From Macrostomum lignano (Eukaryota), in contig NIVC01004190.1 in assembly GCA_002269645.1 (NCBI GenBank), forward strand, positions 1-55,961: a stretch of DNA of 55,961 bases. Reading direction: 5' to 3'. Shown here one piece after another: positions 13,856 to 51,312 of this stretch. Position 1 is the stretch's first letter. Each line of letters opens with the position of its first letter. The position numbers were made by a program, and so were the translations under genes. The notes below the pieces were generated by a model that saw only the letters and a program-made list of their open reading frames with translations, was not told where the DNA came from and searched no databases.

Positions 13856-13931
13856 CTGCGGGAGTTTGGGATTTGGGATTTAAGATCCGCCATCAGCGGG
13901 GCACACAGCTATGAAAAAGGCAGAAACTCAC

Positions 13932-14705
13932 TAGTCGGAAAGAAGTTGTCGCACTGCTGGAACAGCGTCATGACGAGGCCTCGTCGCTGCTCCAGCATTC
14001 GCCTGGCGCTGCCGCCGGGACTCCGCGGTGTGCCGGGGCCGCCGCCGCCGCTGTTGCTGCCGCCCGGCGTCACGGCAACGAAATCGTCGCCGGCCATCTG
14101 CAGAGTGGACCTGGCCAGCTCTTCGGCCTCCTCAGCGGAGAAATTCTGCCCAAAGAACACGTGCCGGTCCTGCTGGGAGCCGGCGGCAGCCGCGGCCGCG
14201 ACGGCAGCGTACAGCGATTCGGCGGCCGTCGGCGGGGCGCTGCGGCAGTGCTGCTGGAAGAAGTTGCGCGGGCTGATGGCGGAGACCGGTGCGGCGCCGG
14301 GCTGGAACTCGGGCAGGTGGCTGAACTTGCGGCCGAAGTCCACCTCGGTCAGCACGGACTTGGTGGTCACGTCCAGCTGGCGCTTGAAGATGCCGTCCGG
14401 GGTGCTCTTGGCCTCCTCGGGTGGCGCCGACGCCGGCACCGCGGACGGAGAATCGTTGGTCGCAGGGGCTCCGACGCCGGCGCTGTTGTTGCCGCTGACG
14501 ATTGTCGGGGACAGCTGCAGCGGGGCTGGCCGCTCGCCCCGCCGCCGACTGCCGCCGCTGCCGGCTGCCTTGCCAGACAAGTCATCGCTGCTAGCACCGC
14601 CGCCGCCAGACGAGCTGACTGTGGAACCGTCCGAGTGGTGATGCTGCACTGGCGGCGGCGGATTGCGGCGCAGCACAAAATGAGTGAAAGCTGACGGGGA
14701 GTCCA

Positions 14706-14736
<31 letters not shown>

Positions 14737-15814
14737 ACTCTGGTGCTGGCTGTGCTGGTCGCTGATGCTGAGCAGGCTGGGCTGCACAGTGGTTGGAACC
14801 AGAACTGCGCCTCCGCTGCTGCTTGTTGAGTAGCGCTGAAATCCTTGCTGCTGATGTTGCTGCTGCAGATGCTCCGATAGTCGACGAAACTTCGACATAG
14901 TCGGCTGCAGCGGAGGCGGACGCGGCGGCAGCTGTTGCTGCTGTCGCTGCAAAGTCGGCGGCAACCCCGGCGACGCCTGAGCGGCCTGATGAGCCACCGC
15001 GGCGTCCGCCAGCAGACGGAGGTTGCTGTCGCTGCCGTTGCTGCCTGCAGCGCCGCCGATCTGATGATGAAGCGGCTGAGCGACAGCGGCGGAGGCTGAG
15101 TCGGACCGTCGGCGCTCCTTAGCGGACGACCAGCGGAAGTTGGGATTCTGGCGGAAGTGCTCGGACTTGACCTGGCTGGCCAGGCTGTTGTACTGCTCCC
15201 TGTCCGCCTTGGACAGGTTGTACCACAACTCGCCGAGGATCTTGCTGACGGCGCGGTTGTCCAGGCCGGGATTCTCCTCCTGGACGCGAGCTCGATTCCG
15301 CTTGCTGAACAGGATGAAGGCGTTCATGGGGCGGCGAATGTGCTCCGGTTGCTGCTGCTGCTGGGACTTGTCCGCCTGAGGAGCATCTCGCTGCGGCCTC
15401 TCCGGCAGCTGGAACACGTCGTCTTCATCTTCCATAGTAGCAGAGCCAACAGTTGGCGGGGCAGCCTTAGCCGCGGTGTCCGACTCGCTGGCAGCCGCTG
15501 GCCGAGCTGCCTGTCCATCAAGTGCGCCGGCGGTGGCTACGGCTGGCAGCTGGTCATGATGAAGCACCGATTGGCTGGGATCGCGCTTGAGCTCAGACTC
15601 CAGAATGGGCAGCAAGCTGGTGCAGGACGGATGCGGCTGCTGCTGCTGGTGATGCAGTTGCAGACTAAAAGCAGAAGACAACGGTGTAACAACGGAGGCT
15701 GGAGCAAAAGTGGAGTAGCCGGTAGCAATAAAGGGTGGAGGTGCAACCGGTGCGGCTGGCACAGTGGCAGCAGGAGGCACGCCAGGCGCCCAGGGCTCCA
15801 GAGGGCGCTGGTAT
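13932..15814 (-). CDS. cic: Capicua exon 3: HMG box, C2-like motif, first half of C1
   Basis: HIRRPMNAFILFSKRNRAR...W (CIC-type HMG box); VDFGRKFSHLPEF (C2-like); RRMLEQRRGLVMTLFQQCDNFFPT (C1); canonical TTCCAG| and |GTGAGT with consistent phases. Confidence 0.96.
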
Positions 15815-16624: not shown

Positions 16625-17780
16625 CAATCCCATTAGGCTTCTGATCCCTAATCTCATTAGGCTACTGATCACAAATCCCATTTGGGATTACGGATCCCAA
16701 ATCCCATTAGGCTACTGATCCCACATCCCATTAGGCTACTGATCCCAAATCCCATTAGGCTACTGATCCCAAATCCCATTAGGCTACTGATTCCAAATCC
16801 CATTAGGCTACTGATTCCAAATCCCATTAGGCTACTAATTCTGAATCTTATTAAGCTACTGATCCCAAATCCCATTAGGCTACTGATCCCAAATCCCATT
16901 AGGCTACTGATCCCAAATCCCATTAGGCTACTGATTCCAAATCCCATTAGGCTACTGATTCCAAATCCCATTAGGCTACTAATTCTGAATCTTATTAAGC
17001 TACTGATCCCAAATCCCATTAGGCTACTGATTCCAAATCCCATTAGGCTACTAATTCTGAATCTTATTAAGCTACTGATCCCAAATCCCATTAGGCTACT
17101 GATTCCAAATCCCATTAGGCTACTGATTCCAAATCCCATTAGGCTACTAATTCTGAATCTTATTAAGCTACTGATTCCAAATCACATTAGGCTACTGATC
17201 CCAAATCCCATCAGGCTACTGATCCCAAATCCCATCAGGCTACTGATTCCAAATCCCATCAGGCTACTGATCCCAAATCCCATCAGGCTACTGATCCCAA
17301 GTGCCATCAGGCTACTGATCCCAAATGCCATCAGGCTACTGATCCCAAATCCCATCAGGCTACTGATCCCAAATCCCATCAGGCTACTGATTTCAAATCC
17401 CATCAGGCTACTGATCCCAAATCCCATCAGGCTACTGATCCCAAGTGCCATCAGGCTACTGATCCCAAATGCCATCAGGCTACTGATCCCAAATCCCATC
17501 AGGCTACTGATTCCAAATCCCATCAGGCTACTGATTCCAAATCCCATCAGGCTACTGATCCCAAATCCCACCAGGCTACTGATCCCAAGTGCCATCAGGC
17601 TACTGATCCCAAATGCCATCAGGCTACTGATCCAAATCCCATCAGGCTACTGATTCCAAATCACATTAGGCTACTGATCCCAAATCCCATTAGGCTGCTA
17701 ATTCCAAATCACATTAGGCTACTTATCCCGAAAGCCATTAGGCTACTGATCCCGAAAGCCATTAGGCTACTGATAGTAAA
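16625..17780. repeat. 24-bp minisatellite (CCAAATCCCATTAGGCTACTGATC)n in cic intron 1, inverted relative to 15899-16300
   Basis: Direct reverse-complement comparison of units. Confidence 0.95.
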
Positions 17781-18910: not shown

Positions 18911-18961
18911 AGAGCTATAAGAGAAAGATTACGGCCGAAAGAATTTCAGTAGCAGACTCAC

Positions 18962-19622
18962 CAGACTCATCTTCATCTTCCAGTCCCGGCGGCGGCGAGG
19001 ACAAATCGTCAACGGTGTCAGAGGCGGACGCTGTGGTGGCAGTCGACTCGGTGGTCGCGGCGGCAGGAGCGGCAGCGGCGACTTCAGCAGCAGCGGCGGC
19101 AGCGGCGTCCAGCTCGTCCTGCCAGGGCGGGCGCAGCAGCCGGAGCTGGGAGCGGTGCACCGACGCCAGCTGGCCGGAGCTCAGCCGCACGGTCACAGCG
19201 GGCTGGGCGGCCGCGGACAGGCCGTCAACGGTGACTGGGCGGTACACACCGTCGGCCAGCTGGTCCTGCGGCAGCTGGGCGCAGGCGAGTTGGCCCTCGA
19301 CCAGCTGGCTGAGCTGCGGCGCGGCGTCGCTCACGACCTCCTCGATGGGGACGCGGAACTGCCGGCTGGAGAGGCCGGAACCGGCGTCGCCAGCGGCCAA
19401 GCTGGGACTCTTCAGCTTGAGCTTCACCGAGCGATAGTCGGTGACCACCAGGCCGAGGCTGCTGGCCAGGCGCTCTTCGACTTCAACAACGGCTCGCTGG
19501 TTGCCGGGCGTGAAGGCCACCAGCTGGCCGGGCATGTAGGCGGCCAGGGGCTCGTGGTAGAACAGCACCCGGGCGCCGCGCCAGGCCGTCACGTCAATGG
19601 CGGCGGGGAGTTCAGCGCTCAT
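18962..19622 (-). CDS. cic: Capicua exon 1 (CIC-L N-terminal, Tudor-like/DUF4819-type region)
   Basis: ATG at 19622; WRGARVL...YMPG and EEVVSDAAPQLSQLVEGQLACA resemble the CIC-L N-terminus; donor TCT G|GTGAGT joins exon 2 in frame. Confidence 0.85.
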
Positions 19623-25497: not shown

Positions 25498-25597
25498 CTG
25501 AAAGCATGTTAGTATGAGTATTCGTATGGGTCAAACTGTACTTTAGTAAAAGCAGTAAACACTAGCTTTTAGCTATATACAGCTCCAGTTTACTTAC

Positions 25598-28500
25598 GGT
25601 AACATTTATCGGTGCCAAAGGTAGACCCAGAGTCGGGGCACAGGTCACAATGCGCCATTCCAATGCGGCGTTTCAGAGCGAAGTTCAAATCACAATTGTG
25701 GCATCCTTTGGCACCGGATTCGCTAACGTAGGTGCCAGCGGGACATTTGGAGCACTCACCGCTGCCTGAGCTGCCAGAGAAAGTGCCTGCTGGGCACAGA
25801 GAGCAGCTGGCAGCGTTTCCAACTGAGAATGAGCCTGCTTCGCAAAGCTGGCAAGGTGCGGAGCCTGCTTTACTCCAGCTTCCAGCAGGGCACTGGCTGC
25901 AGTTTGTTGAGCCCATTTGGTCAGCAAAGGTCCCAGAAGGACAAACGGTGCATTCCGATGCAGCAAGACCGGAATACTTCCCCAGCGGACACATTCTCTG
26001 TTCCGAACGGCCTTCCGTATCGACGTACCACCCTGGCTTGGAGCTCTTACAGTGCGTCTGGTTTGCCTGTGGCTGGTAGAATCCCCGGGGACACGGGGTG
26101 CAAGAAGCTGATCCGACTCGACTGGAATAGCTGCCTTTGGCACAAAAAATGCAATTTGCCGATCCCGGGCTGGGACTGAACGAGCCTGCAGGGCACTGGC
26201 TGCAGTTTGTTGAGGATATTAGGTCAGCAAAGCTTCCAGCAGGGCACGGGGTGCAAGACGCTGACCCAGAACGACTGGAATAGCTGCCTTCGGCACACGA
26301 AGTGCAATTTACTGATCCCGCGCTGGGAGTGAACGAGCCTGCAGGGCACTTGGCGCAAGGGATGCCCTCGACTGGACTGAACTCGCCCCTCTTGCAGTTG
26401 TTGGCGCAGCTCACTGAGCCCTCAGCACTCGACGTTCCAGCAGGGCAAGCAGTGCAGGATTTCTGACCTGGCTTGTCGGCGAAGAACCCCGCAGAGCACA
26501 ACTGGCACTGCGTCTGTCTCTCTGCTTTATTGAACTGTCCCACTGGACAGGGAGTGCACTCCGTTTGACCTCGCTGAGCTGCGAACAAGCCGGCACTGCA
26601 GGCCCCGCACGAAGCAGATCCGTTAAACCTGCTCGCTGTTCCAACATGGCACTGCTGGCACTGTACCGATCCTGGCTTGGAAGCAAAATTTCCTGGACTG
26701 CAGAGCATGCAACTCACAGTCGCTTGTGATACAGAAAAACTTCCAGGAGCGCATGGCAAGCAGTTATGATTTCCCGTTGTGTTCTTGAAAGTACCTGGTT
26801 GGCAGGGCACGCACAGATTTTCCTTGCTGTCACTCAGTTGGTAGCCAACTGGACACTCTGGCAAGCACTGCACTGTCCTGACTCTCCTGCCCCCAATAGA
26901 ATTCCACAATTCAACGCGCACATTGCGACACTGGAAGCAGCTCGTGTCATCTTTTGCTAGATTGCAGTCGATGCACTCTTTGTGACAATCCAGGATGCAG
27001 TGACCATCAACCAGCTTGTAGTTATTGTTCAAACACTCCACCTGCGGCATGTCCTTGGTGAGGTGAATGTCCATCAGCGACACAGACTTCGAGCCCGCTC
27101 CGAACGTGTAGAAAGACAGGCGGCTGTACTGGCTGTCCGGTCGGAACTTGTACCCAGAGTAGACAGTGCCGATCTCGCTGTTCGAGCCCGCCTTACCGAA
27201 CTGCATTAGAACTGATCCATTGGCCTGATTCACACACAAGAAGTAGGACTGGTACAGGTTCTTGTCTCCAAGTGTCCCCATTCCCTTCTGATAGTCTCTC
27301 TTCTGCGGTTTCATTGCTTTGTAGAATGTCACTCCATCCATATTTATCTGCAGGTAGTACCATGTTGTGTGGTCTCTTGGTATGGACGCGAATATAACAA
27401 AGATGTCTCCAGCAGTCGCAGCCGTAAAGTAAAGGCAGTTTTCTTCCCTATCAGGGTCCAGTCTGTGAGAGTTCAACCACCGAACGTTGCACGGAATTGA
27501 CGCCGCATCAGTCGAGTCTGTGCCTTTTTGCCCTTCTATCCGAGAAGCCCTAGCAACCGTGGTACCCTCTATCCAGTCTGGAAGGTTTGGGTTGCGTCGC
27601 TTTGATGCAATAAAGTCCAGCGGATCGATATGGAAGAAGCCTGTCTCCTCCTCATAGATACAGATTTTAGTCTCAGCTGGCTTGAAGCCTTCCAGCTGAC
27701 AGCCTTCGTACAGGTGTGCATGATGGTGCCCTGGCTCGGTCGCAAACCACCTGTCTTTTAGATACGTCATCACATACTTGGCTTGCGATTTCAACAAGTT
27801 CGGAATATCCTGGGGCAGATCAAAAGAGATTAAAAACGGGGACTTCTTGAGCTGCAGAAACGTCAGTGTGTTGTTATTTGAGTTAAACACGTCGATCTTG
27901 GCCAGTGTAGAGCTCTCACAACCGGGTTGCCCTGCTTTCAACTCGTGTGAGGAGGTTGGGAAAGGACCTTCCGTCATGTACGCAGCTACGGCTTTCTCCA
28001 GTGAGAGTCTTCGTCTCTTTAGAGCGTTCTTAAAGTCTTGTTGGTTCTTGTATTTGCAGTAGATTTTAACCAATTTAGTTTTTGTCTTATTGTTAGCAAA
28101 GTAAGTCTCCTCATCGAGGTAGTAGTGACGACGAGTTTTGGGCTCCGTCAAAATATTCACTTTGCTTCCCGCACTTCCAATACAGCCAAAGTCGCGGTTT
28201 CCAGCCGGAAACAGGTCGTCCATGTTCATGTCGAACAGCTGATCGATGGGCTTCAGCTTGAACTCGAACGGCTTCACATAGTCATTGATGGAGGCGATCC
28301 ACCTGTGGTACAGCTCCTTGAATGCCGGAGTGTAAAAGTCAACGAGGGCTTCTGCGATCTCCGGAGTTCCTCCCTGAGCCTCGACGGTGGTCTGGGTAAA
28401 CTCGGGCCCGCTAAAACTGTGGGACTCTTGATTACGTTCATTTCTTGTGCTTCTGTACTGGCTCTCCGACCTTTCACTGCTCGATTTTGTTGTAGTCGTT

Positions 28501-29942
28501 TTCTTTCCGCCAAAACCCAAAAAGCCTGTCCAAGTGGTTTCCTGAGAATACTTTGACTGCAGCAATGAAAAAATTGACTGGAACTCGGTCTCAGCCAGAC
28601 TGGCAAACTCTTCCGACGACGCAAACTTGTTTGTCTTTGCTCTCATTGTGATTTTTAGCTGACCGCCGAACTTTCCAGACCGGATAAAATGCGTGCCCCA
28701 GCGTAGCAGAAAGTCTTGAAATTTGCTGGCAGCGCCAACTGAAGAGTAGGACTCTGGAAGACTCATGTAGTCTCTGAGCGCAGCGAAGTTGATGTCATTG
28801 GGCTTTACATCATCCAGTGAAATTTTGTACATGATTACACTCACATACATGATGGCAAAGAAATCGTCAGTAGAACCTTGTTTTCTTGCAGCCTGGGAAT
28901 ACTGTGAATTTTTTTAGGCCGATTGACTGCTAGTGGTTGATGACGAGCTGCCAGAGCTTTCTCCTGACCCAGATGAAAGCGAGCCACCCACCGCGCCACC
29001 GAGCGCCGCTCCCAAGGCCGCTCCCGCAGGCCCACCCGCTATGGCTCCAATAGCACCACCGACGATTCCACCTATCGCACCGAGATTGAACCCAGACGCC
29101 TCAGAAGTGCTGTGCTGGCGAGCCTCGCTCAAGAACAAATTTCGCTGCTCTGACAGACCGGCTTTGTCCCTGATGTAGCTCATGTACTCGTCCGCAGACC
29201 GGAACGACTTGGTCTCAGCTGTGGTCTCGAAGATGCCAAACACGTTCATCGTGTCGGGCACGTCCTTGTCCAGGAAGGTGGCCATGCTGGAGCAGTAGCG
29301 CTGCACCAGACTGGCTTTGCGGCTCTCGATCTTGTAGAATCCTCGTCCGTCGAAGCCGACGCCGATGTACGCGGCAGCGTCCAGGAGGTTCATGCAGATT
29401 GTATTGCCCTTGCCAGGCACCTTGCTGGAGTAGCATTTGCTAGTCTTGGGATATGATGCACCTGTGCACCCATTCATCAACACCGGACCAACCCCCATTG
29501 GATAGACATAGACGGGCATCTTGTCTTTTGCCTCTTCCTTCTTTTTGTCAGGCTCACCCACGGTCTCCGTCATCACCCAACCCGTAGGCTGATAGTTGGA
29601 GAATCCGTTGAAGCCCTGCTCGGCCTGCAGACTGATGGATCTCGTGCCTGCTTTCTGCGTCTTTGCCGAACGCTCGTTCAGCATGTTCTTTAGAATTTCC
29701 TTGGTGATGAGTGGGGTGGCTTGACCGTCAGTTGATTGCGTGAGATCATCCAGCAAGTCCTTGGTCTTCTTGTCTGAGTTGCTGATTGCGTTTGCAGTCG
29801 CGTCTACAGCCGGACTGTACTGCTCCAGGGCGTTGGCATCGACAGTCTTGCTGGTGTCTTTTTCTGCAGCTTCAACTTGAAATCCAAGCAATGCAATTGC
29901 GATCACTGCAGCCAGACAGGTGTGCATTTTCGAAGCCAGCAA
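25598..29942 (-). CDS. Secreted MACPF (perforin-like) protein with tandem Cys-rich CxxC repeats, exon 1; one in-frame TAA at 28916-28914
   Basis: Signal peptide MHTCLAAVIAIALLGFQVEA; YIGVGFDG; MACPF signature FLLRWGTHFIRSGKFGG; furin-like Cys segment; many CxxCPAG(S/T)F repeats (ephrin-receptor-like/GCC type). ORFs 28914-29942 and 25590-28850 share one frame. Confidence 0.9.
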
Positions 29943-31444: not shown

Positions 31445-32335
31445 AATGGGGAAGGAGAGGGATGGGGAAGGAGAGGGATGGGGAAGGAGAGGGATGGGGA
31501 AGGAGAGGGATGGGGAAGGAGAGGGATGGGGAAGGAGAGGGATGGGGAAGGAGAGGGATGGGGAAGGAGAGGGATGGGAAGGAGAGAGATGGGGAAGGAG
31601 AGAGATGGGGAAGGAGAGAGATGGGGAAGGAGAGAGATGGGAAGGAGAGAGAGATGGGAAGGAGAGAGATGAGGAAGGAGAGAGATGGAGAAGGAGAGAG
31701 ATGGGAAGGAGAGAGATGGGAAGGAGAGAGATGGGGAAGGAGAGAGATGGAGAAATAGAGAGATGGAAAGGAGAGAGATGGGGAAGGAGAGAGATGGGGA
31801 AGGAGAGAGATGGGGAAGGAGAGAGAAGGGGAAGGAGAGGGATGGGGAAATAGAGAGATGGGAAGGAGAGAGATGGGGAAGGAGAGAGATGGGAAGGAGA
31901 GAGATGGAGAAGGAGAGAGATGGGGAAGGAGAGAGATGGGGAAGGAGTGGGATGGGGAAGAAGAGGGATAAGGAAGGAGAGGGATGGGGAAATAGAGAGA
32001 TGGGAAGGAGAGAGATGGGAAGGAGAGAGATGGGAAGGAGAGAGAGATGGGAAGGAGAGAGATGAGGAAGGAGAGAGATGGAGAAGGAGAGAGATGGGGA
32101 AATAGAGAGATGGGAAGGAGAGAGATGGGGAAGGAGAGAGATGGGGAAATAGAGAGATGGAAAGGAGAGAGATGGGGAAGGAGAGAGATGGGGAAGGAGA
32201 GAGATGGGGAAGGAGAGAGATGGGGAAGGAGAGGGATGGGGAAGGAGAGAGATGGGGAAGGAGAGAGATGGGGGAGGAGAGGGATGGGGGAAAAGATGGA
32301 TGGAGAAGGAGAGAGATGGGGAAGGAGAGAGATGG
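31445..32335. repeat. Purine-rich (GA) degenerate minisatellite, GGGGAAGGAGAGRGAT-type
   Basis: Visible; explains the SPSLSFP/GEGERW pseudo-ORFs. Confidence 0.93.
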
Positions 32336-35380: not shown

Positions 35381-36878
35381 ACTTGCACTGCAAAAGTGCG
35401 CGACACAACATGTGCGTTAAATAGATCACAGACTCTGAAGATTACCTTTGATCTACCGAAATGCGTTGGTTCACCAATTTAAAGCAACCCACATTGATTT
35501 CCAAGGGCGCATGCGGGAGGGGGCGGGATCCAGGCGGATAAGTGTTTTAGTGTGGGCCAGGATGACCTGCCCTCCGGGATGCCACGAAGAGGCTGCACCT
35601 AAGTCCGAGATCGTGCGATCTCCTCGATCTGTTGACCATGCGGGCTGCTGCTGCCGTGTGTTTCTGTTAGTTCAAACTATTGATCCCATTATCTCCTGCG
35701 CCATGAGATTCTACGCTCGTAAGGAGTGCCGTATCTAGTTAAGGCAACTTAGCACCAGGACTATCTTCATCTATCGGAATAGCGCATAAAATCTATCGTA
35801 CAACGTACAGGAAAGTCGAATTCAGCACGCCAGTGAAGTACGAGACAGGCTAGGCTTATGGGCTAAGGTCTGCGATGCTTCACGCCTGCCCCTATCTTCA
35901 GCAGGTTAAGGCCGGTGGAAGGTCTGCATTCCCTGTTTGCCTCTGGCAGCCGCAGACTCTCCCACGCTTTCTCGCAAACCGACCCAGGGGTACCCGTCCC
36001 CGCGAGTGTTTAAGGCAGACCCTAGGGCTGCTGGACAGACTGTGCTCAGGTTCCGACGCTGGCCACCCATCCAGTGGCTTTTGCCGAACTTGGGTATGCT
36101 GGTCTGGCTCGCCAGTCCGCAGGTTGTGTTACTGCTTATCGTACCCTCTAATCCCTAAGGTGTTTGACCGTGCCAATGGGCTGGAAGGCCGGGGAGTAGT
36201 CCGGTCGCTAGCGGTATCAGCAAGGCAAATCAGGACCTGGAAGATCCAAGCGACCGAGAAATGCATTATCGCCATCTCACCGCTGACGAACAAACTCGCG
36301 ATTCTGCTTTTCTCTCGCATCGCCAGCTCCATCAGTCGAGTCAATTTAGCCTTCTTCGGAAAGTGATATCAGCTCTTAAAGCAGCAACTGCCACTTGCGT
36401 GTTACTCAAGCCCTCAGTCTGAGGACATTTTTTCCATCTGGCAGCCGGCTTTCACTCATTGGCATTCCTCCCCAATTATGGACACAGTCGCGAAATATGG
36501 AAGCAAGCAGAATTCTCTTTCTTGCCTGATCTTCGTTTTCGATCCGTGCAAAAATGACTGAAAGCCGCAACTGGCATCACCGCATGCGGGGGTGGGCGGA
36601 GCTTGGCTCTGTTTTAGTCGCAATTTTAGGCATTACACTGCGACGTTGCTATGGGACTGCAGATGCTAATGTGCTCAGCAGTTTGACTTCCTGGATAGAG
36701 AGGGAGATAGTTGGGGTTTGCTGGGCCAAAAACGGGAGCATCAATTTGGCCATGCGTCAATCAGTAGCCACGATAGCAGTCATCTAATTTAGCAGCACCC
36801 AGCTGAGCTACAAATGCAAGCGTGGGGGCCTGAGGCTTCGCCACCCACGCAGATTAAACAGCTCTCACTGTTCCGGCC

Positions 36879-37129
36879 ATGATCGAGTCTTCGAGAGCCA
36901 TTCTGCTGCTGTTGTGGCTGTTGACCGTCGCGATTCCGCAGTGTCGCAGCGCGGCCGTCCAGTCTTCGACCGACCCGGACAAGCCGCTCGACTGGTTCCG
37001 TAGACCCGGCCTGCAAGCTGCGGTCGCTGTGGCTGCGGCTGATAAGCGGCAGTTCGCCAACACGGAAGCTCTGCGCCAGGAGTTGCGCCGCATTCTGTAC
37101 AGAATCCAGCACGGCAGCGGGGATTTGAG
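36879..37129 (+). CDS. NPY/NPF-like neuropeptide precursor, exon 1
   Basis: Signal peptide MIESSRAILLLLWLLTVAIPQCRSA; dibasic KR; QFANTEALRQELRRILYRIQHGSGDLR; phase-2 donor AG|GTGAGC inside the Arg codon. Confidence 0.8.
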
Positions 37130-37518
37130 GTGAGCATCTGAGTGGCTCATCTACTCAGCTTAGAGCTGAGCAGTCCCAAAATTTTCTTCCAGTTAATTCC
37201 GTAGATGATCAGTTTGTATCCAATACAATCAGCAAACTTCAGTGCTCAGTGCACCGTAGACAGTTGCAGCTATGGTGAAGCGGTGGCATACAAAGAGGGA
37301 CTCGATTTAGTTCGAGTGCAGAGCGAAACTCCTCATCAGAAAAGTTCAGAAGGGAGAATATGTCCGACCTGAGCCTTGTAGCTTCGCTAGACGCAACTAG
37401 AAAACCGCGAGACATACCATCCCGACTCCGCTCTTTAAAACGCCTAGAAATACACGTACAGGCGAGATTGCATTGCATCATTTCTGAATAAAAAGAAATT
37501 GCAACACCTTTGTTGCAG

Positions 37519-37528
37519 GTACGGATAG
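37519..37528 (+). CDS. NPY/NPF-like precursor, exon 2 (R-Y-G-stop)
   Basis: TTTGTTGCAG|G TAC GGA TAG completes ...DLRY-G*, an amidation signal. Confidence 0.72.
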
Positions 37529-38057: not shown

Positions 38058-39760
38058 GTGACGTCTCTTAGAGAGTCTTCAATCTATTTACTGGACATTG
38101 TGACGGCTCTTAGAGAGCCGAGTCTTCAATCTATTTACTGGACATTGTGACGGCTCTTAGAGAGCCGAGTCTTCAATCTATTTACTGGACATTGTGACGG
38201 CTCTTAGAGAGCCGAGTCTTCAATCTATTTACTGGACATTGTGACGGCTCTTAGAGAGCCGAGTCTTCAATCTATTTACTGGACATTGTGACGGCTCTTA
38301 GAGAGCCGAGTCTTCAATCTCATTACTGGACGTTGTGACGGCTCTTAGAGAGCCGAGTCTTCAATCTATTTACTGGACATTGTGACGGCTCTTAGAGAGC
38401 CAAGTCTTCAATCTATTTACTGGACATTGTGACGGCTCTTAGAGAGCCGAGTCTTCAATCTATTTACTGGACATTGTGACGGCTCTTAGAGAGCCGAGTC
38501 TTCAATCTCATTACTGGACGTTGTGACGGCTCTTAGAGAGCCGAGTCTTCAATCTATTTACTGGACATTGTGACGGCTCTTAGAGAGCCAAGTCTTCAAT
38601 CTATTTACTGGACATTGTGACGGCTCTTAGAGAGCCGAGTCTTCAATCTCATTACTGAACGTTGTGACGGCTCTTAGAGAGCCGAGTCTTCAATCTATTT
38701 ACTGGACATTGTGACGGCTCTTAAAGAGCCGAGTCTTCAATCTCATTACTGGACGTTGTGACGGCTCTTAGAGAGCCGAGTCTTCAATCTATTTACTGGA
38801 CATTGTGACGGCTCTTAGAGAGCCGAGTCTTCAATCTATTTACTGGACATTGTGACGGCTCTTAGAGAGCCGAGTCTTCAATCTATTTACTGGACATTGT
38901 GACGGCTCTTAGAGAGCCGAGTCTTCAATCTCATTACTGGACGTTGTGACGGCTCTTAGAGAGCCGAGTCTTCAATCTATTTACTGGACATTGTGACGGC
39001 TCTTAGAGAGCCAAGTCTTCAATCTATTTACTGGACATTGTGACGGCTCTTAGAGAGCCGAGTCTTCAATCTCATTACTGAACGTTGTGACGGCTCTTAG
39101 AGAGCCGAGTCTTCAATCTATTTACTGGACATTGTGACGGCTCTTAGAGAGCCGAGTCTTCAATCTCATTACTGGACGTTGTGACGGCTCTTAGAGAGCC
39201 GAGTCTTCAATCTATTTACTGGACATTGTGACGGCTCTTAGAGAGCCAAGTCTTCAATCTATTTACTGGACGTTGTGACGGCTCTTAGAGAGCCGAGTCT
39301 TCAATCTCATTACTGAACGTTGTGACGGCTCTTAGAGAGCCGAGTCTTCAATCTATTTACTGGACATTGTGACGGCTCTTAGAGAGCCGAGTCTTCAATC
39401 TCATTACTGGACGTTGTGACGGCTCTTAGAGAGCCGAGTCTTCAATCTATTTACTGGACATTGTGACGGCTCTTAAAGAGCCGAGTCTTCAATCTCATTA
39501 CTGGACGTTGTGACGGCTCTTAGAGAGCCGAGTCTTCAATCTATTTACTGGACATTGTGACGGCTCTTAGAGAGCCGAGCCTTAAATCTCTTTACTGGAA
39601 CTTGTGCCGGCTCTTAGAAAGCCGAGCCTTCAATCTCTTTACTGGACGTTGTGACGGCTCTTAGAGAGCCGAGTCTTCAATCTCATTACTGGACGTTGTG
39701 ACGGCTCTTAGAGAGCCGAGCCTTCAATCTCTTTACTGGACCTTGTGACAGCTTTTAGAG
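38058..39760. repeat. 47-bp minisatellite, ~36 copies, two interleaved variants
   Basis: Unit CTCTTAGAGAGCCGAGTCTTCAATCTATTTACTGGACATTGTGACGG; period checked at 38101/38148. Confidence 0.97.
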
Positions 39761-40498
39761 AACGAAATGAATCAGGTAGCTTCGCCTCGGCCTGAAACTT
39801 TTGTATTGGTTGCTCCAACGAGTTGAAAGAATCCTCATGAAAGAAGTCTGCTATCAACTGCTCTGGGACAACAAAATCGGCCTCGTGTCGACGCGATGCC
39901 GAGGCTTTGTCAGATCTCTCAGTTAGTGGAGGCTTTGTAAAGTAGTACGGCATACTGTAGTTGTGCTGCTGAATTGAGTGGCAACCGCCTCTGGCTTCAA
40001 TTTTCTCTGGGAGAGGAGAGAGCATCGGGATCATCACTAGGTTTTCCGTTTCTTTCTGTGCAGGTTTCTGACTCAGCTGTCCGACTCGACGAACTGCAAA
40101 GACAGATGCGAGTGTAATTGGTTGGTTGGAACGTTGCCTTTCTAGATAGATTTCGAAGACATTTTGCAAGGAGTTCTTTTTTCTTAGGAAACCGGTGAAA
40201 TGACACTTCATTCGCTATTGCCCAGAGTGTCGTTTTCGGATTTTCAGCCATATACAGGACACTTGTTGGGCATTCGGACAAATGCAAGTATTTCCCAAGG
40301 ACTACTCAAAAACTCAGGACGCAGAACTTAAACTTGGTAGGAATCAAATATCATTTATACATCTATAAGAATAAAAGATCTATGGTAGGAATTTTTTCCA
40401 AGGCCCGCTTGAAAACTTTCTCTATGGTAAAAAGACTCTACTAGATAGCGATATTATATATGAATTGCAAAGTTTGAAGTCGTGTTGCTAGTAGAATA

Positions 40499-43969: not shown

Positions 43970-44500
43970 GTTAGTCAATTGTCACCGGCGGTCAGATTGC
44001 ATTCAGTCAATTGTCACCGGCAGTCAGATTGCAGTCAGTCAATTGTCACCGGCAGTCAGATTGCAGTCAGTCAATTGTCACCGGCAGTCAGATTGCAGTC
44101 AGTCAATTGTCACTGGCAGTCAGATTGCAGTCAGTCAATTGTCACCGGCAGTCAGATTGCTGTCAGTCAATTGTCACCGGCAGTCGGATTGCAGTCAGTC
44201 AATTGTCACCGGCAGTCGGATTGCAGTCAGTCAATTGTCACTGGCAGTCGGATTGCAGTCAGTCAATTGTCACTGGCAGTCGGATTGCAGTCAGTCAATT
44301 GTCACCGGCAGTCGGATTGCAGTCAGTCAATTGTCACCGGCAGTCGGATTGCAGTCAGTCAATTGTCACTGGCAGTCGGATTGCAGTCAGTCAATTGTCA
44401 TCGGCAGTCAGATTGCAGTCAGTCAATTGTCACCGGCAGTCGGATTGCAGTCAGTCAATTGTCATCGGCAGTCAGATTGCAGTCAGTCAATTGTCATTCA
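43970..44500. repeat. 32-bp minisatellite (CAGTCAGTCAATTGTCACCGGCAGTCRGATTG)n, ~16 copies
   Basis: Pseudo-ORFs start every 32 bp (43979, 44011, 44043). Confidence 0.95.
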
Positions 44501-46531
44501 GATGAGATCGCTTCACTACTAACAAAAACATTCAAAAGAGAATTTCTTTTTTAGCCATTCTAGCTAATTAACGTGAAAAGCAATTCCTTTCACCGGCAGG
44601 GGACTGATGAAATTACGGTAGTGGAGAACTGCTCATTTGCATCTCTTATTCCGGGGCTTTACATCCATAGCTTTAGGCACTTGTCTTTGCACCAGATTAG
44701 TGGCTTTAAGCTCGCTTTCTAGTAGTTTGACTACAAAGAGTGAAAGGGCAGACAGAGAACAATGAAGTTCCACTTCGAAGCACCCTAGTCGTAATGAGAG
44801 CCGGTTTGACGCTGCGGTGCAAATGCTGCGTATTTCTGTCTGGCCAAATCTACCTGTAATTTACACTATTCACGGCTGGAAGCAGCTTTTGAGCAACCCC
44901 TGTTAGCCAGTTGTTTCTTACGACGGGATCATTTTCAAAAACTCGAAATGAAAAATATCAAAGATAAACTTTGCCTGGCAAGTATGTAGTCATCTAATTT
45001 ACAGAAACGCAGAGATGGATAACAATGGCTTCTCAAACGAGAACTAAGATCAGGTTTTGAAAATGCTTTTAAAAACTGGCCGGACCCAGTGAGAAGCCCC
45101 GCACCCAGTGAGGAGGGTTTCCTGCTCAAAAGATTGACACTGACTAATTATTCATTAAATTCGACTCTCCGCTCGGTTCTCAATTTGATAAGATGTCTCA
45201 GAACACCTCAAGGACGTGAGATCGGTGCGAAATCGAACTGCAATGCATCGAATTGACTTTCTTGCGGCCTTTTCTGTGCGCCTGACATTTCATAATTTCG
45301 GTCTCGATGGCATGACTTCACCCACCTGGAACTCATTAGGCTCTTTAGTGGTGATAATAAATCAATATCAGGGACAACTAGAAAGCGATACTCAGCAAGG
45401 GGCTCGTGCGCGAGACTTGACCTGTGGCTTGCGCAATTACCACATTGCTCATTCAATTTTTAGCCACGCCAGCTTTTAACCTCGTGCAGCTGAAAAAGTT
45501 CTAAAGTTAAAATTAAAACCACGGTTGCAAAATTCATTATGAAACTTTACTAATGTTAGTAATTATAGCTATTTTGCAGTTCCTCCACCGTAGAGCAGAT
45601 GGCGACGCCCTGAATGCTGAGGCTGCTCTGCAAGGACTCAACGAACTACAGCAGGCTGGCTACATAGTTTGGCTTAATTAGGCCATCAATAAGAGCTCAA
45701 AGACTCACCTTTGTTGAATAAAATGCAGGTGCGCCTTCGAGATTGAAGGCTTGAGAGAAAAAGTTACGAAGATCGTGAGATTCTACATTTTATGAGCTAA
45801 AATTAAGGCAGCACTGATGAGAGAGGGGGCCGCAGCGACTGATCTGCGATGCGAGATAAGAAAGCGAGCAAATCTGAAAGAATGATTCTTAGGCTCGGCA
45901 CAGAGGATGAAGGGTAGGAGGCCGAAGAAACGTGCTTGTCTTTTTGCAGTTTGGGAAATGATTGCGTTTTGTCATCACTTAATCACAGTAGCCAGAACAA
46001 TCATTCCAAGATTAATAGGAATCAGCTGCCACTAGCATCCCATTAGCAGGCATAAAGCCTAATCTTTAACATAGGTGGCGAATCTCGCTACACCGGAACA
46101 AGAACGGTCGGAGTCAATGCACAGCGGGAGGCGGGGCTGCGTCAATTCCGGCCGCTGTGTAGCAGTTCCGCGGTCCCAAACTATCGTCTCTGCCAGAGAA
46201 AGTTGCAGAGTGCCGGGGAGGCAGGCCAGAGAAGAGAGATCGGCTCATCTGATTTGCTCTGGCAAATGTTCCCGGCCATGAAGCCTCACTCACTTCAGCC
46301 TCTCGCCTCCAATCTGAGAAATCAGAGGGTAGGAGAGAAATGGGGAAATGGGAATTGGAAGGAGAGGATGAGGATCCCTAACTGTTAGTATTTATACCAT
46401 CCTCTGACTCGTCTCTGCTCTTCACTTACAACACTCTCAGATATTAGAACGTCAGAGCCTGTCTTTGGCAGTCACTTCGACCTCTCAATTCAAATATCTA
46501 CTCAAAACATCAACTAGTTCAGTTGAGCAGG

Positions 46532-47884
46532 ATGTACGTCTTTCCCTATGAGCAGTTTATGTACGACAACTACCAAGCCTACCGGCTGAGCAAGCTGGTG
46601 AAGTGTGTGCTGCCGCCGATACTGCTGACTGTGGGCACCGCGGGCAACATCCTGGGCATGGTGGTCTTACATCGGCATTCGAAGTCGGTGCCACTGTACC
46701 TCTATCTAATACTTATCGCTTTGGCCGACCAGATGGTTCTCTCGACCGGCCTGTTTTCAAAATGGCTGAAAGAAGCATTCGGCTTCCGAATCGAGACGCT
46801 GAGCAGCCTCAGCTGTAAGATGACGTTCTTCGTGCAGTTCTCGTTCAGCTATGCCTCCGTGTGGCTTATCGTTGCCATGACAATCGAGCGCTTCTACGCC
46901 GTTATGTCACCGCTGCGGGCGAGCACCAACACGCATAGCCGACGCCGCATCCGCTGGACCGCGGCCCTAATCTACGCAGCCGACCTGCTGCTGTTCAATT
47001 CGCACTGGATGTACACCATGGATCTGCTGCCCATGGTTCGCAACCTCACCGAGTTTAACGCCGACATCAACGCCACTCTGACCACCGAGTTTACCTACCA
47101 CGACTGCGACCTGCGGCCGGCCTTGGGCATCGCCTACTTCATCTATTGGTTTGACACTGTCTGCTACCTGCTGATACCGTTCACGGTAATCTTCCTGCTC
47201 AACCTGGCCATCATCGTTCATCTAGTGCGACCGAAATGCACGAGGCGATCCACGCCAGGTAACCAGGGGCGGCCCCGGCATCAGCGGCAGCACCGCCAAC
47301 ATCCGTCTCTGGAGGGCAGCTTTGCTTCAGCTTCATCCTGCGGCAGTCGTCGAGGCCGTCAGAATCAGCACCAGCATCAGGATCAGCAGGCTGAACGGCT
47401 GCGCACTCTTACGGCGTCACCCAGAAGGAGTCGATCGGCCAGACAGGTCACAGTGATGCTGGTCACGATCTGCGCCTGCTACCTGCTCTGCACACTGCCC
47501 ATCGCGCTATTGAAACTCTCCATCTTCTTGTTCGATCTGACGCGCTCAAGCGACCTGGGCAGCATTGCCAACTTCTACCTGATCGAGGCCCTGGCCGAGA
47601 TGGTCATGTACCTGAGCAATGTTGGCAATTTCTACTTGTATGTGGCCTCGGCCGGCCGCTTTAGACGCGAGTTGAAGCAGACGTTCAGCTGCTTTCAGCG
47701 CCGCCAAATCAACGCCAGCCAGCGCAGCCGCAACAGTTTGCGCGGCGCTGACCGGCGGCCGAGCCAGTTTCACAAGTCTCAGCGGCAGCCGGCTTCACCG
47801 CAGCATCAGCAGGTGGAGATTCCGCTTCTAATGCCATCCGGAGTTACTGGCTGCCGCAGCGGTGCAACTGCCCTGTCAAGCTGA
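46532..47884 (+). CDS. Intronless rhodopsin-family peptide GPCR (FMRFamide/MIP/GPR139-like orphan group), ~450 aa
   Basis: Seven hydrophobic segments; GTAGN (TM1), LALAD-like IALAD (TM2), TIERFYAV (TM3), LIPF (TM5), LCTLP (TM6), NFYLY (TM7), FRRELKQTF (helix 8); ATG at 46532. Confidence 0.95.
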   Translation: MYVFPYEQFMYDNYQAYRLSKLVKCVLPPILLTVGTAGNILGMVVLHRHSKSVPLYLYLILIALADQMVLSTGLFSKWLKEAFGFRIETLSSLSCKMTFFVQFSFSYASVWLIVAMTIERFYAVMSPLRASTNTHSRRRIRWTAALIYAADLLLFNSHWMYTMDLLPMVRNLTEFNADINATLTTEFTYHDCDLRPALGIAYFIYWFDTVCYLLIPFTVIFLLNLAIIVHLVRPKCTRRSTPGNQGRPRHQRQHRQHPSLEGSFASASSCGSRRGRQNQHQHQDQQAERLRTLTASPRRSRSARQVTVMLVTICACYLLCTLPIALLKLSIFLFDLTRSSDLGSIANFYLIEALAEMVMYLSNVGNFYLYVASAGRFRRELKQTFSCFQRRQINASQRSRNSLRGADRRPSQFHKSQRQPASPQHQQVEIPLLMPSGVTGCRSGATALSS

Positions 47885-50231: not shown

Positions 50232-51166
50232 CTACTCGTCTCCAGCCCTTTTGCCGAAACCGCTGGACCAGCGCTGACCAGCTCGTTTACCGAAGCCGTT
50301 CGACCAGCGCTGACCAGCTCGCTTACCGAAGCCGCTGGACCAACGTTGACCAGCTCGCTTACCGAAACCGCTCGACCAGCGCTGACCAGCTCGTTTACCG
50401 AAGCCGTTCGACCAGCGCTGACCAGCTCGCTTACCGAAGCCGCTGGACCAACGTTGACCAGCTCGCTTACCGAAACCGCTCGACCAGCGCTGACCAGCTC
50501 GTTTACCGAAGCCGTTCGACCAGCGCTGACCAGCTCGCTTACCGAAGCCGCTGGACCAACGTTGACCAGCTCGCTTACCGAAACCGCTCGACCAGCGCTG
50601 ACCAGCTCGCTTACCGAAGCCGCTGGACCAACGTTGACCAGCTCGCTTACCGAAACCGCTCGACCAGCGCTGACCAGCTCGTTTACCGAAGCCGTTCGAC
50701 CAGCGCTGACCAGCTCGCTTACCGAAGCCGCTGGACCAACGTTGACCAGCTCGCTTACCGAAACCGCTCGACCAGCGCTGACCAGCTCGCTTACCGAAGC
50801 CGCTGGACCAACGTTGATCCGGTCGCTTACCGAAGCCGCTGGACCAACGTTGACCAGCTCGCTTACCGAAGCCGTTCGACCAGCGCTGACCAGCTCGCTT
50901 ACCGAAGCCGCTGGACCAACGTTGACCAGCTCGCTTACCGAAGCCGCTGGACCAGCGCTGACCAGCTCGCTTACCGAAGCCGCTCGACCAACGTTGATCC
51001 GGTCGCTTACCGAAGCCGCTCGACCAGCGCTGACCAGCTCGCTTACCGAAGCCACTCGACCAGCGCTGTCCGTCTCGCTTTTTTAAACCCTCGTGCTGAG
51101 GCTGTTCGTTCGAGAGTTCGCGAGCAAGATGCGCGACTTCATCGTCCTGTTCAGCTTCGTTTAGTT
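50232..51166 (-). CDS. Multi-copy amidated neuropeptide precursor, exon 2: 23 copies of xxQRWS(S/N)GF-G-KR
   Basis: Acidic spacer, KKR, then 23 x 12-aa units each ending in Gly-Lys-Arg; acceptor GTTGCAG at 51169-51167. Confidence 0.95.
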
Positions 51167-51242
51167 CTGCAACAACCAATGCTGAGTCGGCTTATTTCGA
51201 GTGCTCAAGATTATTCTTGATGTGCAAGTCTCAGCAACTTAC

Positions 51243-51312
51243 CGTTTGTCTGGGCAGATACGACCACAGCGAATATTACAGCCAGACACACCAGCCGCCA
51301 AATGTATTGCAT
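51243..51312 (-). CDS. Neuropeptide precursor exon 1 (signal peptide MQYIWRLVCLAVIFAVVVSAQTN)
   Basis: ATG at 51312; donor G|GTAAGT; 76-bp intron joins exon 2 in frame; total ~334 aa. Confidence 0.9.

What the first reader, a model, noticed from the sequence alone, without database searches (positions are those of the whole stretch)
36879..37528. Cryptic NPY/NPF-like gene whose amidated end (R|Y-G-stop) is on a separate exon
Seen: signal peptide, KR, then a predicted 28-mer QFANTEALRQELRRILYRIQHGSGDLRY-amide. The intron splits the penultimate Arg codon after two bases, and exon 2 supplies only Tyr-Gly-stop. Known: NPY/NPF genes have a conserved phase-2 intron in that Arg codon, and F-x5-LRQ-x-L echoes molluscan NPF. 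The ending DLRY-amide departs from RPRF/RQRY, and there is no C-terminal flanking peptide. Inference: a divergent NPY/NPF or sNPF/PrRP-related peptide likely missed by annotation.
Basis: partly seen in the sequence, partly recalled or inferred. Interest (0 to 1): 0.75.

Follow-up and report, generated by a model that had tools for sequence, protein, structure and literature searches.

The report
Already-annotated divergent flatworm neuropeptide F gene
This is a real two-exon gene of the flatworm Macrostomum lignano for a small secreted, amidated neuropeptide with the hallmark gene structure of the NPY/NPF family, but public databases already hold exactly this gene model (UniProt calls it "Neuropeptide F"), so it is a divergent family member and not a hidden gene.

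Summary
An 84-codon ORF (36879-37133) starts with a signal peptide, has Lys-Arg at residues 56-57, and ends in AG|GTGAGC at 37129/37130. A pyrimidine-rich acceptor at 37518/37519 completes the Arg codon and adds only Tyr-Gly-stop. The spliced 86-aa product is 100% identical over its full length to UniProt A0A1I8GD52, "Neuropeptide F", Macrostomum lignano. Two GenBank models built from RNA-seq transcripts (BOX15_Mlig003988g1/g2) have the same DLRYG end. The gene is therefore expressed and was not missed by annotation.

[quoted passage not shown] PrRP/sNPF genes carry a phase-1 intron elsewhere. Sequence similarity to NPFs is weak:
- Pfam Hormone_3 gives no hit.
- A planarian NPY profile does not beat shuffles.
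- hhalign gives P about 1e-3, and global alignment gives p about 0.01-0.04.
- The best match is to slug NPFs, with an exact F-x5-LRQ-x-L.

The family's RPR[FYL] core is replaced by D-L-R-Y. The missing C-terminal flanking peptide, the N-terminal spacer plus KR, and the roughly 28-29-aa length all have planarian precedents (NPY-7, -10, -3, -8).

Verdict: a real, already catalogued, sequence-divergent NPY/NPF-type prohormone gene. Interest is low to moderate.

The parts
36879..37129 (+). Exon 1 coding part: Met1 to the first two bases (AG) of the Arg84 codon
   Evidence: Identical to residues 1-84 of UniProt A0A1I8GD52. GenBank transcript-derived models start about 36858-36860.
36879..36950 (+). 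Signal peptide, residues 1-24 (MIESSRAILLLLWLLTVAIPQCRS). The cleavage site is inferred: after Ser24 or Ala26.
   Evidence: Hydrophobic core ILLLLWLLTVAI, Kyte-Doolittle mean 3.0. Small residues at -3/-1. A frameshifted copy is named 'Secreted protein' in UniProt. No SignalP run was available.
36951..37043 (+). N-terminal spacer propeptide, residues 25-55 (AAVQSSTDPDKPLDWFRRPGLQAAVAVAAAD). Contains an RR site at residues 41-42.
   Evidence: BLASTP against slug NPF aligns SSTDPDKP with the NPF N-terminus SPPERP and treats residues 37-56 as an insertion.
37044..37049 (+). Lys56-Arg57 dibasic convertase site (AAG CGG)
   Evidence: Conserved in both paralogous loci. M. lignano has a neuronal PC2 homologue (PMC4490696).
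37050..37129 (+). Exon-1 part of the predicted mature peptide: Q58...L83 plus the AG of Arg84
   Evidence: AlphaFold2 predicts a helix at 59-78 followed by coil, at low confidence.
37130..37518 (+). Intron, 389 nt, GTGAGC...TTGTTGCAG, phase 2 inside the Arg84 codon
   Evidence: The L002 paralogue has a 36-nt deletion just inside the intron but keeps GTGAGCA and the acceptor. The position matches the NPY/NPF hallmark (PMC7314547, PMC6585902, PMC2953531).
37519..37528 (+). Exon 2 coding part: third base of Arg84 (G), Tyr85 (TAC), Gly86 (GGA, amide donor), stop (TAG)
   Evidence: Invariant in all three loci.

Best explanation
This is an expressed two-exon prohormone gene of Macrostomum lignano that belongs, as a sequence-divergent member, to the NPY/NPF neuropeptide family. 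Shown: the gene is spliced at 37129|37519 to give an 86-residue prepropeptide ending ...DLRYG. Inferred from established prohormone processing: signal peptidase removes about 24-26 residues. A PC2-type convertase cuts after Lys56-Arg57. The N-terminal Gln58 can cyclise to pyroglutamate. Because Gly86 is the last residue, peptidylglycine alpha-amidating monooxygenase can amidate Tyr85 directly, without a carboxypeptidase step. The product would be pQFANTEALRQELRRILYRIQHGSGDLRY-NH2 (28 aa, monoisotopic 3384.79 Da). A shorter ILYRIQHGSGDLRY-NH2 is possible if R70-R71 is cut; a homologous RR is cut in planarian NPY-5. Inferred by family analogy: the peptide is released from neurons and acts on a rhodopsin-type NPY/NPF-like GPCR. 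Arg at -4 and Pro at -3 of the canonical RPR[FY]amide are replaced by Asp-Leu, so its receptor preference may differ from canonical NPFs.
For: Gene and splice:
- The spliced product is an exact 86/86 match to UniProt A0A1I8GD52 'Neuropeptide F'.
- GenBank models PAA54632.1 and PAA64623.1 carry the same C-terminus. That annotation was built from RNA-seq and transcript assemblies (PMC5730564).
- ORF, KR, donor, acceptor and YG-stop are kept in a 97%-identical paralogous locus.
- The acceptor motif is rare: 2 in 111,922 positions.

Family:
- The intron lies between nucleotides 2 and 3 of the Arg codon of the C-terminal R-Y. [quoted passage not shown]
- hhalign of the M. lignano pair against 23 NPF/NPY precursors aligns KRQFANTEALRQELRR to the family's F....EL..YL.. 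segment, P = 9e-4.
- Semi-global alignment to 23 family cores beats shuffles: 24/3000 reach the observed score, and 98/3000 with RYG held fixed.
- The top matches are slug NPFs, with F-x5-LRQ-x-L exact and G-x-x-R-[FY]-G in register after one indel.
- BLASTP against slug NPF gives E = 3e-4 pairwise.

Planarian precedents:
- No C-terminal peptide: NPY-7.
- Spacer plus KR before the peptide: NPY-10, -3, -4, -8.
- 29-aa peptides: NPY-3, -8.
- A Tyr ending: NPY-5, -7, -10.

Structure: a predicted helix at 59-78 followed by a flexible tail.
Against: - Sequence similarity is not statistically compelling. Pfam Hormone_3 gives no hit even at E <= 10, while control planarian NPY-5 scores 1.4e-11 and NPY-7 scores 0.012.
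- An HMM of ten planarian NPY cores gives 0.6 bits, and 282/5000 shuffles do as well.
- The hhalign probability is only 22.6%.
- An exhaustive phmmer search of 1.84 billion representatives finds only M. lignano's own copies, so no cross-species conservation could be shown.
- The invariant R-P-R of the 23 family members is D-L-R here.
- The family's Tyr in the ..YL.. motif is Glu, and the Tyr near -10 is offset.
- Divergence between paralogues is the same in the CDS (2.8%) and the intron (2.5%). dN/dS is 0.25 on only 7 substitutions, so purifying selection is not demonstrated.
- Helix amphipathicity is not above shuffles.
- The AlphaFold model has low confidence (pLDDT 59).
- The basis of the UniProt name is unknown. 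A sister entry with 97% identity is named 'DUF885 domain-containing protein', which shows that such automatic names are unreliable.
Confidence: 0.72

Rival explanations
1. It is a lineage-specific (orphan) amidated RYamide neuropeptide of macrostomid flatworms that is not descended from NPY/NPF. On this reading the intron position and the short LRQ motif are coincidences.
For: No significant profile match to NPY/NPF. No relatives outside M. lignano. RPR is replaced by DLR. A 31-residue spacer lies between the signal peptide and the peptide. The planarian NPY profile search retrieved NPFs from planarians, molluscs, arthropods and a cestode, but nothing from M. lignano.
Against: With random placement, an intron would hit this exact nucleotide of a 258-nt CDS about 1 time in 258. 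The position and phase are the family hallmark. The F-x5-LRQ-x-L and G-x-x-R-[FY]-G motifs sit at nearly the same spacing as in slug NPF, 27 versus 26 residues. hhalign gives P about 1e-3 in the right register.
Confidence: 0.17
2. It is a member of another RF/RYamide family: sNPF/PrRP, or luqin/RYamide.
For: The -LRYamide ending resembles the -LRF/-RLRFamide endings of sNPFs. RYamide peptides are reported in flatworms (PMC3503879).
Against: PrRP/sNPF-type genes have a phase-1 intron in the N-terminal or central part of the peptide, not in the Arg codon (PMC7314547). Here the whole peptide up to Arg84 is on one exon. From my own knowledge, luqin/RYamide precursors carry a short peptide right after the signal peptide and a C-terminal region with two conserved Cys. 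This precursor ends at the Gly, and its only Cys is in the signal peptide.
Confidence: 0.05
3. It is a decaying or non-functional paralogue, or a transcribed ORF whose product is not processed into a bioactive peptide. This includes the unspliced reading that ends ...GDLR-stop.
For: One genomic copy (L001, NIVC01001733.1) has a 1-nt deletion that frameshifts after the signal peptide. CDS divergence is no lower than intron divergence. The receptor-binding RPR motif has been lost. The TGA inside the donor would end an unspliced ORF.
Against: The window copy and the L002 copy are intact. Both keep the ATG, signal peptide, KR, splice sites and YG-stop despite 2.5-4% divergence in the surrounding DNA. 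None of the three amino-acid differences touches KR or GSGDLRYG. Transcript-derived models use the splice. The single-base deletion lies in a GC run of a PacBio-based assembly and may be an error.
Confidence: 0.06

Closest known systems
Schmidtea mediterranea NPY-superfamily prohormones (Smed-npy-1 to -11; Collins et al. 2010, PMC2953531)
   Same: Flatworm origin. Small precursors of about 70-90 aa carrying one peptide. An intron in the Arg codon before the terminal aromatic residue. Some members end in Tyr (NPY-5, -7, -10). NPY-7 ends ...RPRYG-stop with no flanking peptide and has a long N-terminal spacer. NPY-10, -3, -4 and -8 have a spacer followed by KR or KKR. NPY-3 and NPY-8 peptides are 29 aa. 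NPY-5 shares the EALR motif and an RR site in the helix.
   Different: Nine of the ten planarian sequences retrieved have R-P-R-[FYL]; NPY-9 is printed ...RPYRG. Here the end is D-L-R-Y. The planarian Y-L-x-x-L-N-x-Y motif is replaced by E-L-R-R-I-L-Y. The planarian profile does not detect this peptide. A GSG stretch precedes the C-terminal pentapeptide.
Molluscan neuropeptide F (Deroceras reticulatum NPF1 A0A1X9WEG3; Arion vulgaris A0A0B6YRT3)
   Same: Best pairwise similarity. F-x5-L-R-Q-x-L is exact. There is a Gly six residues before the end and then R-[FY]-G. The distance from the Phe to the terminal aromatic residue is 26 versus 27 residues. BLASTP gives E = 3e-4.
   Different: In slug NPF the 39-aa peptide starts directly after the signal peptide, ends GRPRFamide, and is followed by GKR and a flanking peptide. 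The M. lignano precursor has an extra stretch of about 20 residues with dibasic sites between the Pro-rich start and the helix, and nothing after the Gly.
Divergent NPFs assigned by gene structure: C. elegans FLP-27 (PMC7314547) and curculionid beetle NPF ending Pro-Tyr-amide (PMC6585902)
   Same: These are precedents in which the C-terminal motif or the whole sequence has drifted, and the phase-2 intron in the penultimate codon was used to recognise NPF orthology.
   Different: In those cases, clearer sequence similarity to relatives (beetle NPFs) or candidate NPY/NPF-type receptors (C. elegans NPR-11/NPR-12) backed the assignment. No such support could be obtained here.
PrRP/sNPF-type peptides
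   Same: Amidated peptides of about 20-30 residues with an RF/RY-type end. Both -LRYamide and -LRFamide endings have a hydrophobic residue before the Arg.
   Different: The gene structure differs: those genes have a phase-1 intron in the N-terminal or central part of the peptide. That structure is not found here.

Membership tests
NPY/NPF family | [quoted passage not shown] 2000, as cited in PMC7314547; PMC6585902; PMC2953531) | tested here: met
   AG|GTGAGC...TTGCAG|G at 37129/37519. The splice is confirmed by an exact match of the spliced product to database models that derive from transcripts.
NPY/NPF family | Secreted precursor with one peptide copy ending Arg-[Phe/Tyr]-Gly (amidation signal) | tested here: met
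   Signal peptide, KR, a single peptide and ...LRYG-stop. Amidation itself is inferred.
NPY/NPF family | C-terminal R-x-R-[FY]amide (R-P-R invariant in the 23 aligned members) | tested here: not met
   Alignment A3 has R, P and R invariant. Here the sequence is D82-L83-R84. Only the Gly at -6, the Arg at -2 and the aromatic residue are kept.
NPY/NPF family | Match to the curated family profile (Pfam PF00159 Hormone_3) | tested here: not met
   No hit at E <= 10 for the 29-mer, the 62-aa propeptide or the full precursor. Controls: Smed-NPY-5 scores 1.4e-11 and Smed-NPY-7 scores 0.012. The precomputed Pfam field for P0001 is '-'.
NPY/NPF family | Sequence similarity of the helical mid-region (..F....EL..YL..LN.YY..) | tested here: inconclusive
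   hhalign gives P = 9e-4 but a probability of 22.6%. Global alignment gives p about 0.008, or 0.03-0.04 with the C-terminus held fixed. The planarian-only HMM is not above shuffles. Tyr in the YL motif is Glu here.
NPY/NPF family | Peptide of about 36-40 residues that starts right after the signal peptide, with a Pro-rich N-terminus and an amphipathic helix (PP-fold) | tested here: inconclusive
   The predicted peptide is 28 aa and lies after a 31-aa spacer. The Pro-rich DPDKP segment lies in the spacer. A helix is predicted at 59-78, at low confidence. The hydrophobic moment is 0.41, similar to the controls but not above shuffles. Planarian NPY-3 and NPY-8 are also 29 aa and follow a spacer.
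NPY/NPF family | Activates an NPY/NPF-type GPCR | not testable with these tools
   Needs a receptor assay. The GPCR ORF 9 kb downstream (46523-47884) shows no specific affinity to NPY receptors among solved structures.
PrRP/sNPF family | Phase-1 intron in the region encoding the N-terminal or central part of the peptide (PMC7314547) | tested here: not met
   The peptide from Gln58 to the AG of Arg84 is one uninterrupted exon. The only intron is phase 2, in Arg84.
Luqin/RYamide family | Short RF/RW/RYamide peptide directly after the signal peptide, and a C-terminal precursor region with two conserved Cys (from my own knowledge) | tested here: not met
   The precursor ends at the amidation Gly. 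Its only Cys is Cys22, in the signal peptide.

The most novel reading that the evidence does not exclude
M. lignano belongs to an early-branching lineage of rhabditophoran flatworms. Its NPF orthologue may have been remodelled in two ways. First, a roughly 20-residue insertion with dibasic sites may have split the ancestral Pro-rich N-terminus from the helix. Second, the receptor-contacting RPRF end may have changed to DLRY. If so, this would be an NPY/NPF-derived peptide with altered, possibly new, receptor specificity. It also lies within 15 kb of a peptide-type GPCR gene and an apparently undescribed 23-copy xxQRWS[S/N]GFamide precursor gene.
Probability: 0.15. Interest if true: 0.45.

Novelty: already known. 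Interest (0 to 1): 0.22.

Why it matters
The practical result is a correction. The gene is not cryptic. Anyone working with the M. lignano proteome already has this model, and UniProt already calls it Neuropeptide F.

What remains of interest is modest. The peptide is an unusually divergent NPY/NPF-type sequence, ending DLRYamide instead of RPRF/Yamide. Curated profiles do not recognise it, and only gene structure places it in the family. In planarians an NPY-family peptide (NPY-8) controls germline development (PMC2953531). M. lignano is a transgenic model, so a knock-down or receptor pairing would be feasible. Such a study could show how much of the C-terminal motif an NPF can lose and still signal.

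Tried and rejected
- Exhaustive phmmer of the 86-aa precursor against 1.84 billion representatives found only M. lignano copies, so no orthologues were available for a conservation test. The word-indexed search gave the same result.
- Pfam scans of the mature peptide and the propeptide gave no Hormone_3 hit. A sub-threshold ABATE hit (E = 0.006-0.013, 16.6-17.6 bits against a cutoff of 24.4) was dismissed as noise.
- An HMM of planarian NPY cores against shuffles and window ORFs was not significant.
- A planarian NPY profile search of 5.8 billion proteins, aimed at canonical M. lignano NPFs, returned none. It did yield a diverse NPF set that was used for alignment A3.
- dN/dS between paralogues had too few substitutions to be informative.
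- The hydrophobic moment of the helix was not above shuffles.
- Single-sequence AlphaFold2 gave low confidence. Only the helix/coil layout was used, and no fold search was run.
- The neighbouring GPCR was tested as a possible NPY receptor and showed no specific affinity.
- A second Y/F-G-stop acceptor motif at 30699 (minus strand) was read and dismissed.
- A search for a canonical ...R-P-AG|GTRAG exon end in the window found none.
- McVeigh et al. 2009 (PMC2749192) and Koziol et al. 2016 may list M. lignano neuropeptides, but neither is held in the paper library. I could not check whether this peptide is already described in print.
- The bacterial, viral and metagenome contig collections were not scanned, because they are irrelevant to an animal gene.

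Full report
**What is in the sequence**

The window is genomic DNA of the free-living flatworm Macrostomum lignano. The proteins it encodes match M. lignano database entries exactly, and two loci of assembly GCA_002269645.1 align to it at 97-100% identity.

At the reported coordinates, an ATG at 36879 opens an 84-codon ORF. Its translation is MIESSRAILLLLWLLTVAIPQCRSAAVQSSTDPDKPLDWFRRPGLQAAVAVAAADKRQFANTEALRQELRRILYRIQHGSGDLR. The features along it are:
- The first 24 residues have the layout of a signal peptide. The hydrophobic core is ILLLLWLLTVAI, with a Kyte-Doolittle mean of 3.0, and small residues sit at -3/-1.
- Lys56-Arg57 lie at 37044-37049.
- The ORF's own stop, TGA, lies inside a consensus splice donor: GAT TTG AG|GTGAGC, with exon 1 ending at 37129.
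- An acceptor 389 nt downstream (cacctttgttgcag|G, exon 2 starting at 37519) supplies the third base of the Arg codon, then TAC GGA TAG (Tyr-Gly-stop), ending at 37528.

**Is it more than chance?**

The motif 'AG, purine, Tyr/Phe codon, Gly codon, stop' occurs only twice in the 111,922 positions of both strands of the window. Only this copy is preceded by a pyrimidine-rich tract. The other copy lies in non-coding repeat-like DNA. The chance of such an acceptor within 400 nt downstream of a phase-2 AG|GT donor is therefore below 1%.

**The splice is already documented**

The 86-residue spliced product matches UniProt A0A1I8GD52 at 100% identity over 100% of its length. That entry is named 'Neuropeptide F', Macrostomum lignano. 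The same cluster holds two further sequences:
- A0A1I8G9N0, 86 aa, with three substitutions (S29P, A60D, Q77E).
- GenBank PAA54632.1 (BOX15_Mlig003988g2).

A second GenBank model, PAA64623.1 (g1), has the same C-terminal 63 residues. All of them end ...GSGDLRYG.

The GenBank annotation of that assembly was produced from RNA-seq with StringTie/TACO plus a de novo transcriptome, with ORFs called by TransDecoder (PMC5730564). These models are therefore spliced transcripts, not ab initio predictions. The title word 'cryptic' and the inference 'likely missed by annotation' are wrong.

**The paralogous loci**

L001 (NIVC01001733.1) is identical to the window across the gene except for two changes. 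One is an intron substitution. The other is a 1-nt deletion just after the signal peptide, which explains both the 'partial' GenBank model and the UniProt entry A0A1I8G9L3, 'Secreted protein', a frameshifted reading.

L002 (NIVC01002877.1) is 97% identical. It has a 36-nt deletion at the start of the intron that regenerates the same GTGAGCA donor. It keeps the ATG, KR, acceptor and YG-stop.

Divergence between the window and L002 is 2.8% in the CDS (4 synonymous and 3 non-synonymous changes, pN/pS 0.25), 2.5% in the intron and 4.2% in the 5' flank. That is too little to show selection either way.

**Family assignment: gene structure**

The literature is explicit. [quoted passage not shown] Ten of eleven planarian npy genes share it (PMC2953531). 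PrRP/sNPF-type genes instead have a phase-1 intron in the N-terminal or central part of the peptide. The M. lignano gene has exactly the NPY/NPF arrangement and not the PrRP/sNPF one. The same criterion has been used to recognise divergent members, namely C. elegans FLP-27 and weevil NPFs that end Pro-Tyr-amide.

**Family assignment: sequence**

Here the evidence is weak.
- Pfam Hormone_3 (PF00159) does not hit the peptide, the propeptide or the precursor, even at E <= 10. Planarian NPY-5 scores 1.4e-11 and NPY-7 scores 0.012.
- An HMM of ten planarian NPY cores gives 0.6 bits, and 282 of 5000 shuffles match or exceed that.
- An exhaustive phmmer search of 1.84 billion representatives finds only M. 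lignano's own copies.
- A planarian NPY profile retrieves NPFs of planarians, slugs, arthropods and a cestode, but no M. lignano protein.

There is nevertheless signal in the right register.
- hhalign of the two M. lignano sequences against 23 NPF/NPY precursors aligns KRQFANTEALRQELRR with the family's F....EL..YL.. segment (P = 9e-4, probability 22.6%).
- Semi-global BLOSUM62 alignment to the 23 family cores exceeds all but 24 of 3000 shuffles, or 98 of 3000 when the C-terminal RYG is held fixed.
- The best partners are slug NPFs (EFRNPNELRQYLKELNEYYAIMGRPRFG). With these, F-x5-L-R-Q-x-L is exact. The Phe lies 26 residues before the terminal aromatic residue, against 27 in M. lignano, and G-x-x-R-[FY]-G lines up.
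- BLASTP against a slug precursor gives E = 3e-4 for the pair. It also aligns SSTDPDKP, just after the signal peptide, with the slug NPF N-terminus SPPERP, and treats residues 37-56 as an insertion.

The departures from the family are three. The R-P-R that is invariant in all 23 aligned members is D-L-R here. The Tyr of the YL motif is Glu. A GSG stretch precedes the last five residues.

**Features that looked odd but have flatworm precedents**

The prohormone sequences in the supplement of PMC2953531 provide the precedents.
- NPY-7 ends ...RPRYG-stop with no flanking peptide and has a long spacer before the peptide.
- NPY-10 is signal peptide, spacer, KR, peptide, GKR, stop.
- NPY-3, -4 and -8 have spacers ending in KR or KKR.
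- The NPY-3 and NPY-8 peptides are 29 residues long.
- NPY-5, -7 and -10 end in Tyr.
- NPY-5 contains ...PEALRR|Y... and is found cleaved at that RR. This suggests that R70-R71 in the M. lignano helix could also be cut, giving ILYRIQHGSGDLRY-NH2.

**Structure**

Single-sequence AlphaFold2 has low confidence (mean pLDDT 59). It predicts a helix at residues 59-78 followed by an unstructured GSGDLRYG, which is the layout of NPY-type peptides. The hydrophobic moment is 0.41, similar to planarian NPY-8 (0.445) and slug NPF (0.359), but it is not above shuffles.

**Mechanism**

Shown: transcription, and splicing at 37129|37519 to an 86-aa prepropeptide.

Inferred from standard prohormone processing:
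- The signal peptide is removed.
- A PC2-type convertase cleaves after K56-R57. M. lignano has a neuronal PC2 homologue whose knock-down is lethal (PMC4490696).
- Gln58 can form pyroglutamate.
- Tyr85 is amidated directly from the terminal Gly86.

Inferred by analogy: the peptide signals through an NPY/NPF-like GPCR. Because the Arg at -4 and the Pro at -3 are lost, the cognate receptor may not be the canonical one.

I put about 0.9 on 'real, expressed, secreted amidated-peptide gene' and about 0.7 on 'NPY/NPF family by descent'.

**Rivals**

- A lineage-specific RYamide peptide with a coincidental intron position: about 0.17.
- sNPF/PrRP or luqin/RYamide: about 0.05. Gene structure and precursor layout argue against both.
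- A non-functional paralogue or an unspliced ORF: about 0.06. Two intact, expressed copies argue against it.

**Novelty and score**

The gene model, its splice and even the name 'Neuropeptide F' are already in public databases, so this is already known at the level claimed. I found no open-access paper that discusses this peptide. The two most likely sources, McVeigh et al. 2009 and Koziol et al. 2016, are not held in the library. The residual interest is that this is a strongly divergent NPF in a tractable model organism.

Noticed in passing
window 50232-51312, minus strand (exon 1 51312..51243, exon 2 51166..50232): A second neuropeptide-type gene lies 13 kb downstream of the NPF-like gene. 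Exon 1 encodes a signal peptide (MQYIWRLVCLAVIFAVVVSAQTN) and ends in G|GTAAGT. Exon 2 follows an acceptor (ttgttgcag) and encodes an acidic spacer, KKR, and then 23 tandem copies: AGQRWSSGF (x15), AGQRWSNGF (x5), PDQRWSSGF (x2) and DGQRWSSGF (x1). Each copy is followed by GKR, which predicts xxQRWS[S/N]GFamide peptides. No protein hit was found. The exact sequence is not in the collection. No paper mentions a WSSGF neuropeptide. It may be unannotated or undescribed.
   Followed up: partly
window 46523-47884, plus strand: A single-exon 453-aa ORF encodes a rhodopsin-family GPCR (Pfam 7tm_1, 1.1e-20). It lies between the two neuropeptide genes. The closest solved structures are only about 1e-10 (alpha-1A adrenergic, ghrelin and opioid receptors), with no specific affinity to NPY receptors. 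The exact sequence is not in the protein collection.
   Followed up: partly
L001 (NIVC01001733.1) about 10093-10099, equivalent to window about 36951-36956: This copy of the NPF-like gene is otherwise identical to the window. It has a 1-nt deletion (GCGGCC to GCGCC) that frameshifts after the signal peptide. The deletion explains the 'partial' GenBank model PAA64623.1 and the UniProt 'Secreted protein' A0A1I8G9L3. It could be a real pseudogenised duplicate or a long-read assembly error.
   Followed up: partly
window 25590-28850 and 28914-29942, minus strand: One uninterrupted 1086-aa ORF carries a MACPF domain followed by about 15 Ephrin_rec_like / TNFR-type Cys-rich repeats. A 342-aa ORF with a signal-peptide-like start and a Gly-rich tail lies just upstream on the same strand. 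It may be an earlier exon of the same gene.
   Followed up: no
window 13909-15780 and 18915-19622, minus strand: One ORF has an HMG box (1.5e-19) and another ORF upstream has DUF4819 (5.4e-12). From my own knowledge, this domain pair is that of the transcriptional repressor Capicua. They are probably two exons of a capicua orthologue.
   Followed up: no
window, many sites (for example 2-589, 1086-1806, 5766-7366, 11930-13661, 16626-17774, 31446-32335, 38073-39761, 43973-44496): The window is full of long minisatellite arrays, with periods of 14-50 nt and up to 80 copies. These arrays generate most of the long spurious ORFs in the six-frame list. One 47-nt array (38073-39761) starts 550 nt downstream of the NPF-like gene.
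   Followed up: no
UniProt names of P0001 and P0005: Two 97%-identical 86-aa entries of the same gene family carry unrelated automatic names: 'Neuropeptide F' and 'DUF885 domain-containing protein'. The database name alone is therefore weak evidence for family membership.
   Followed up: no
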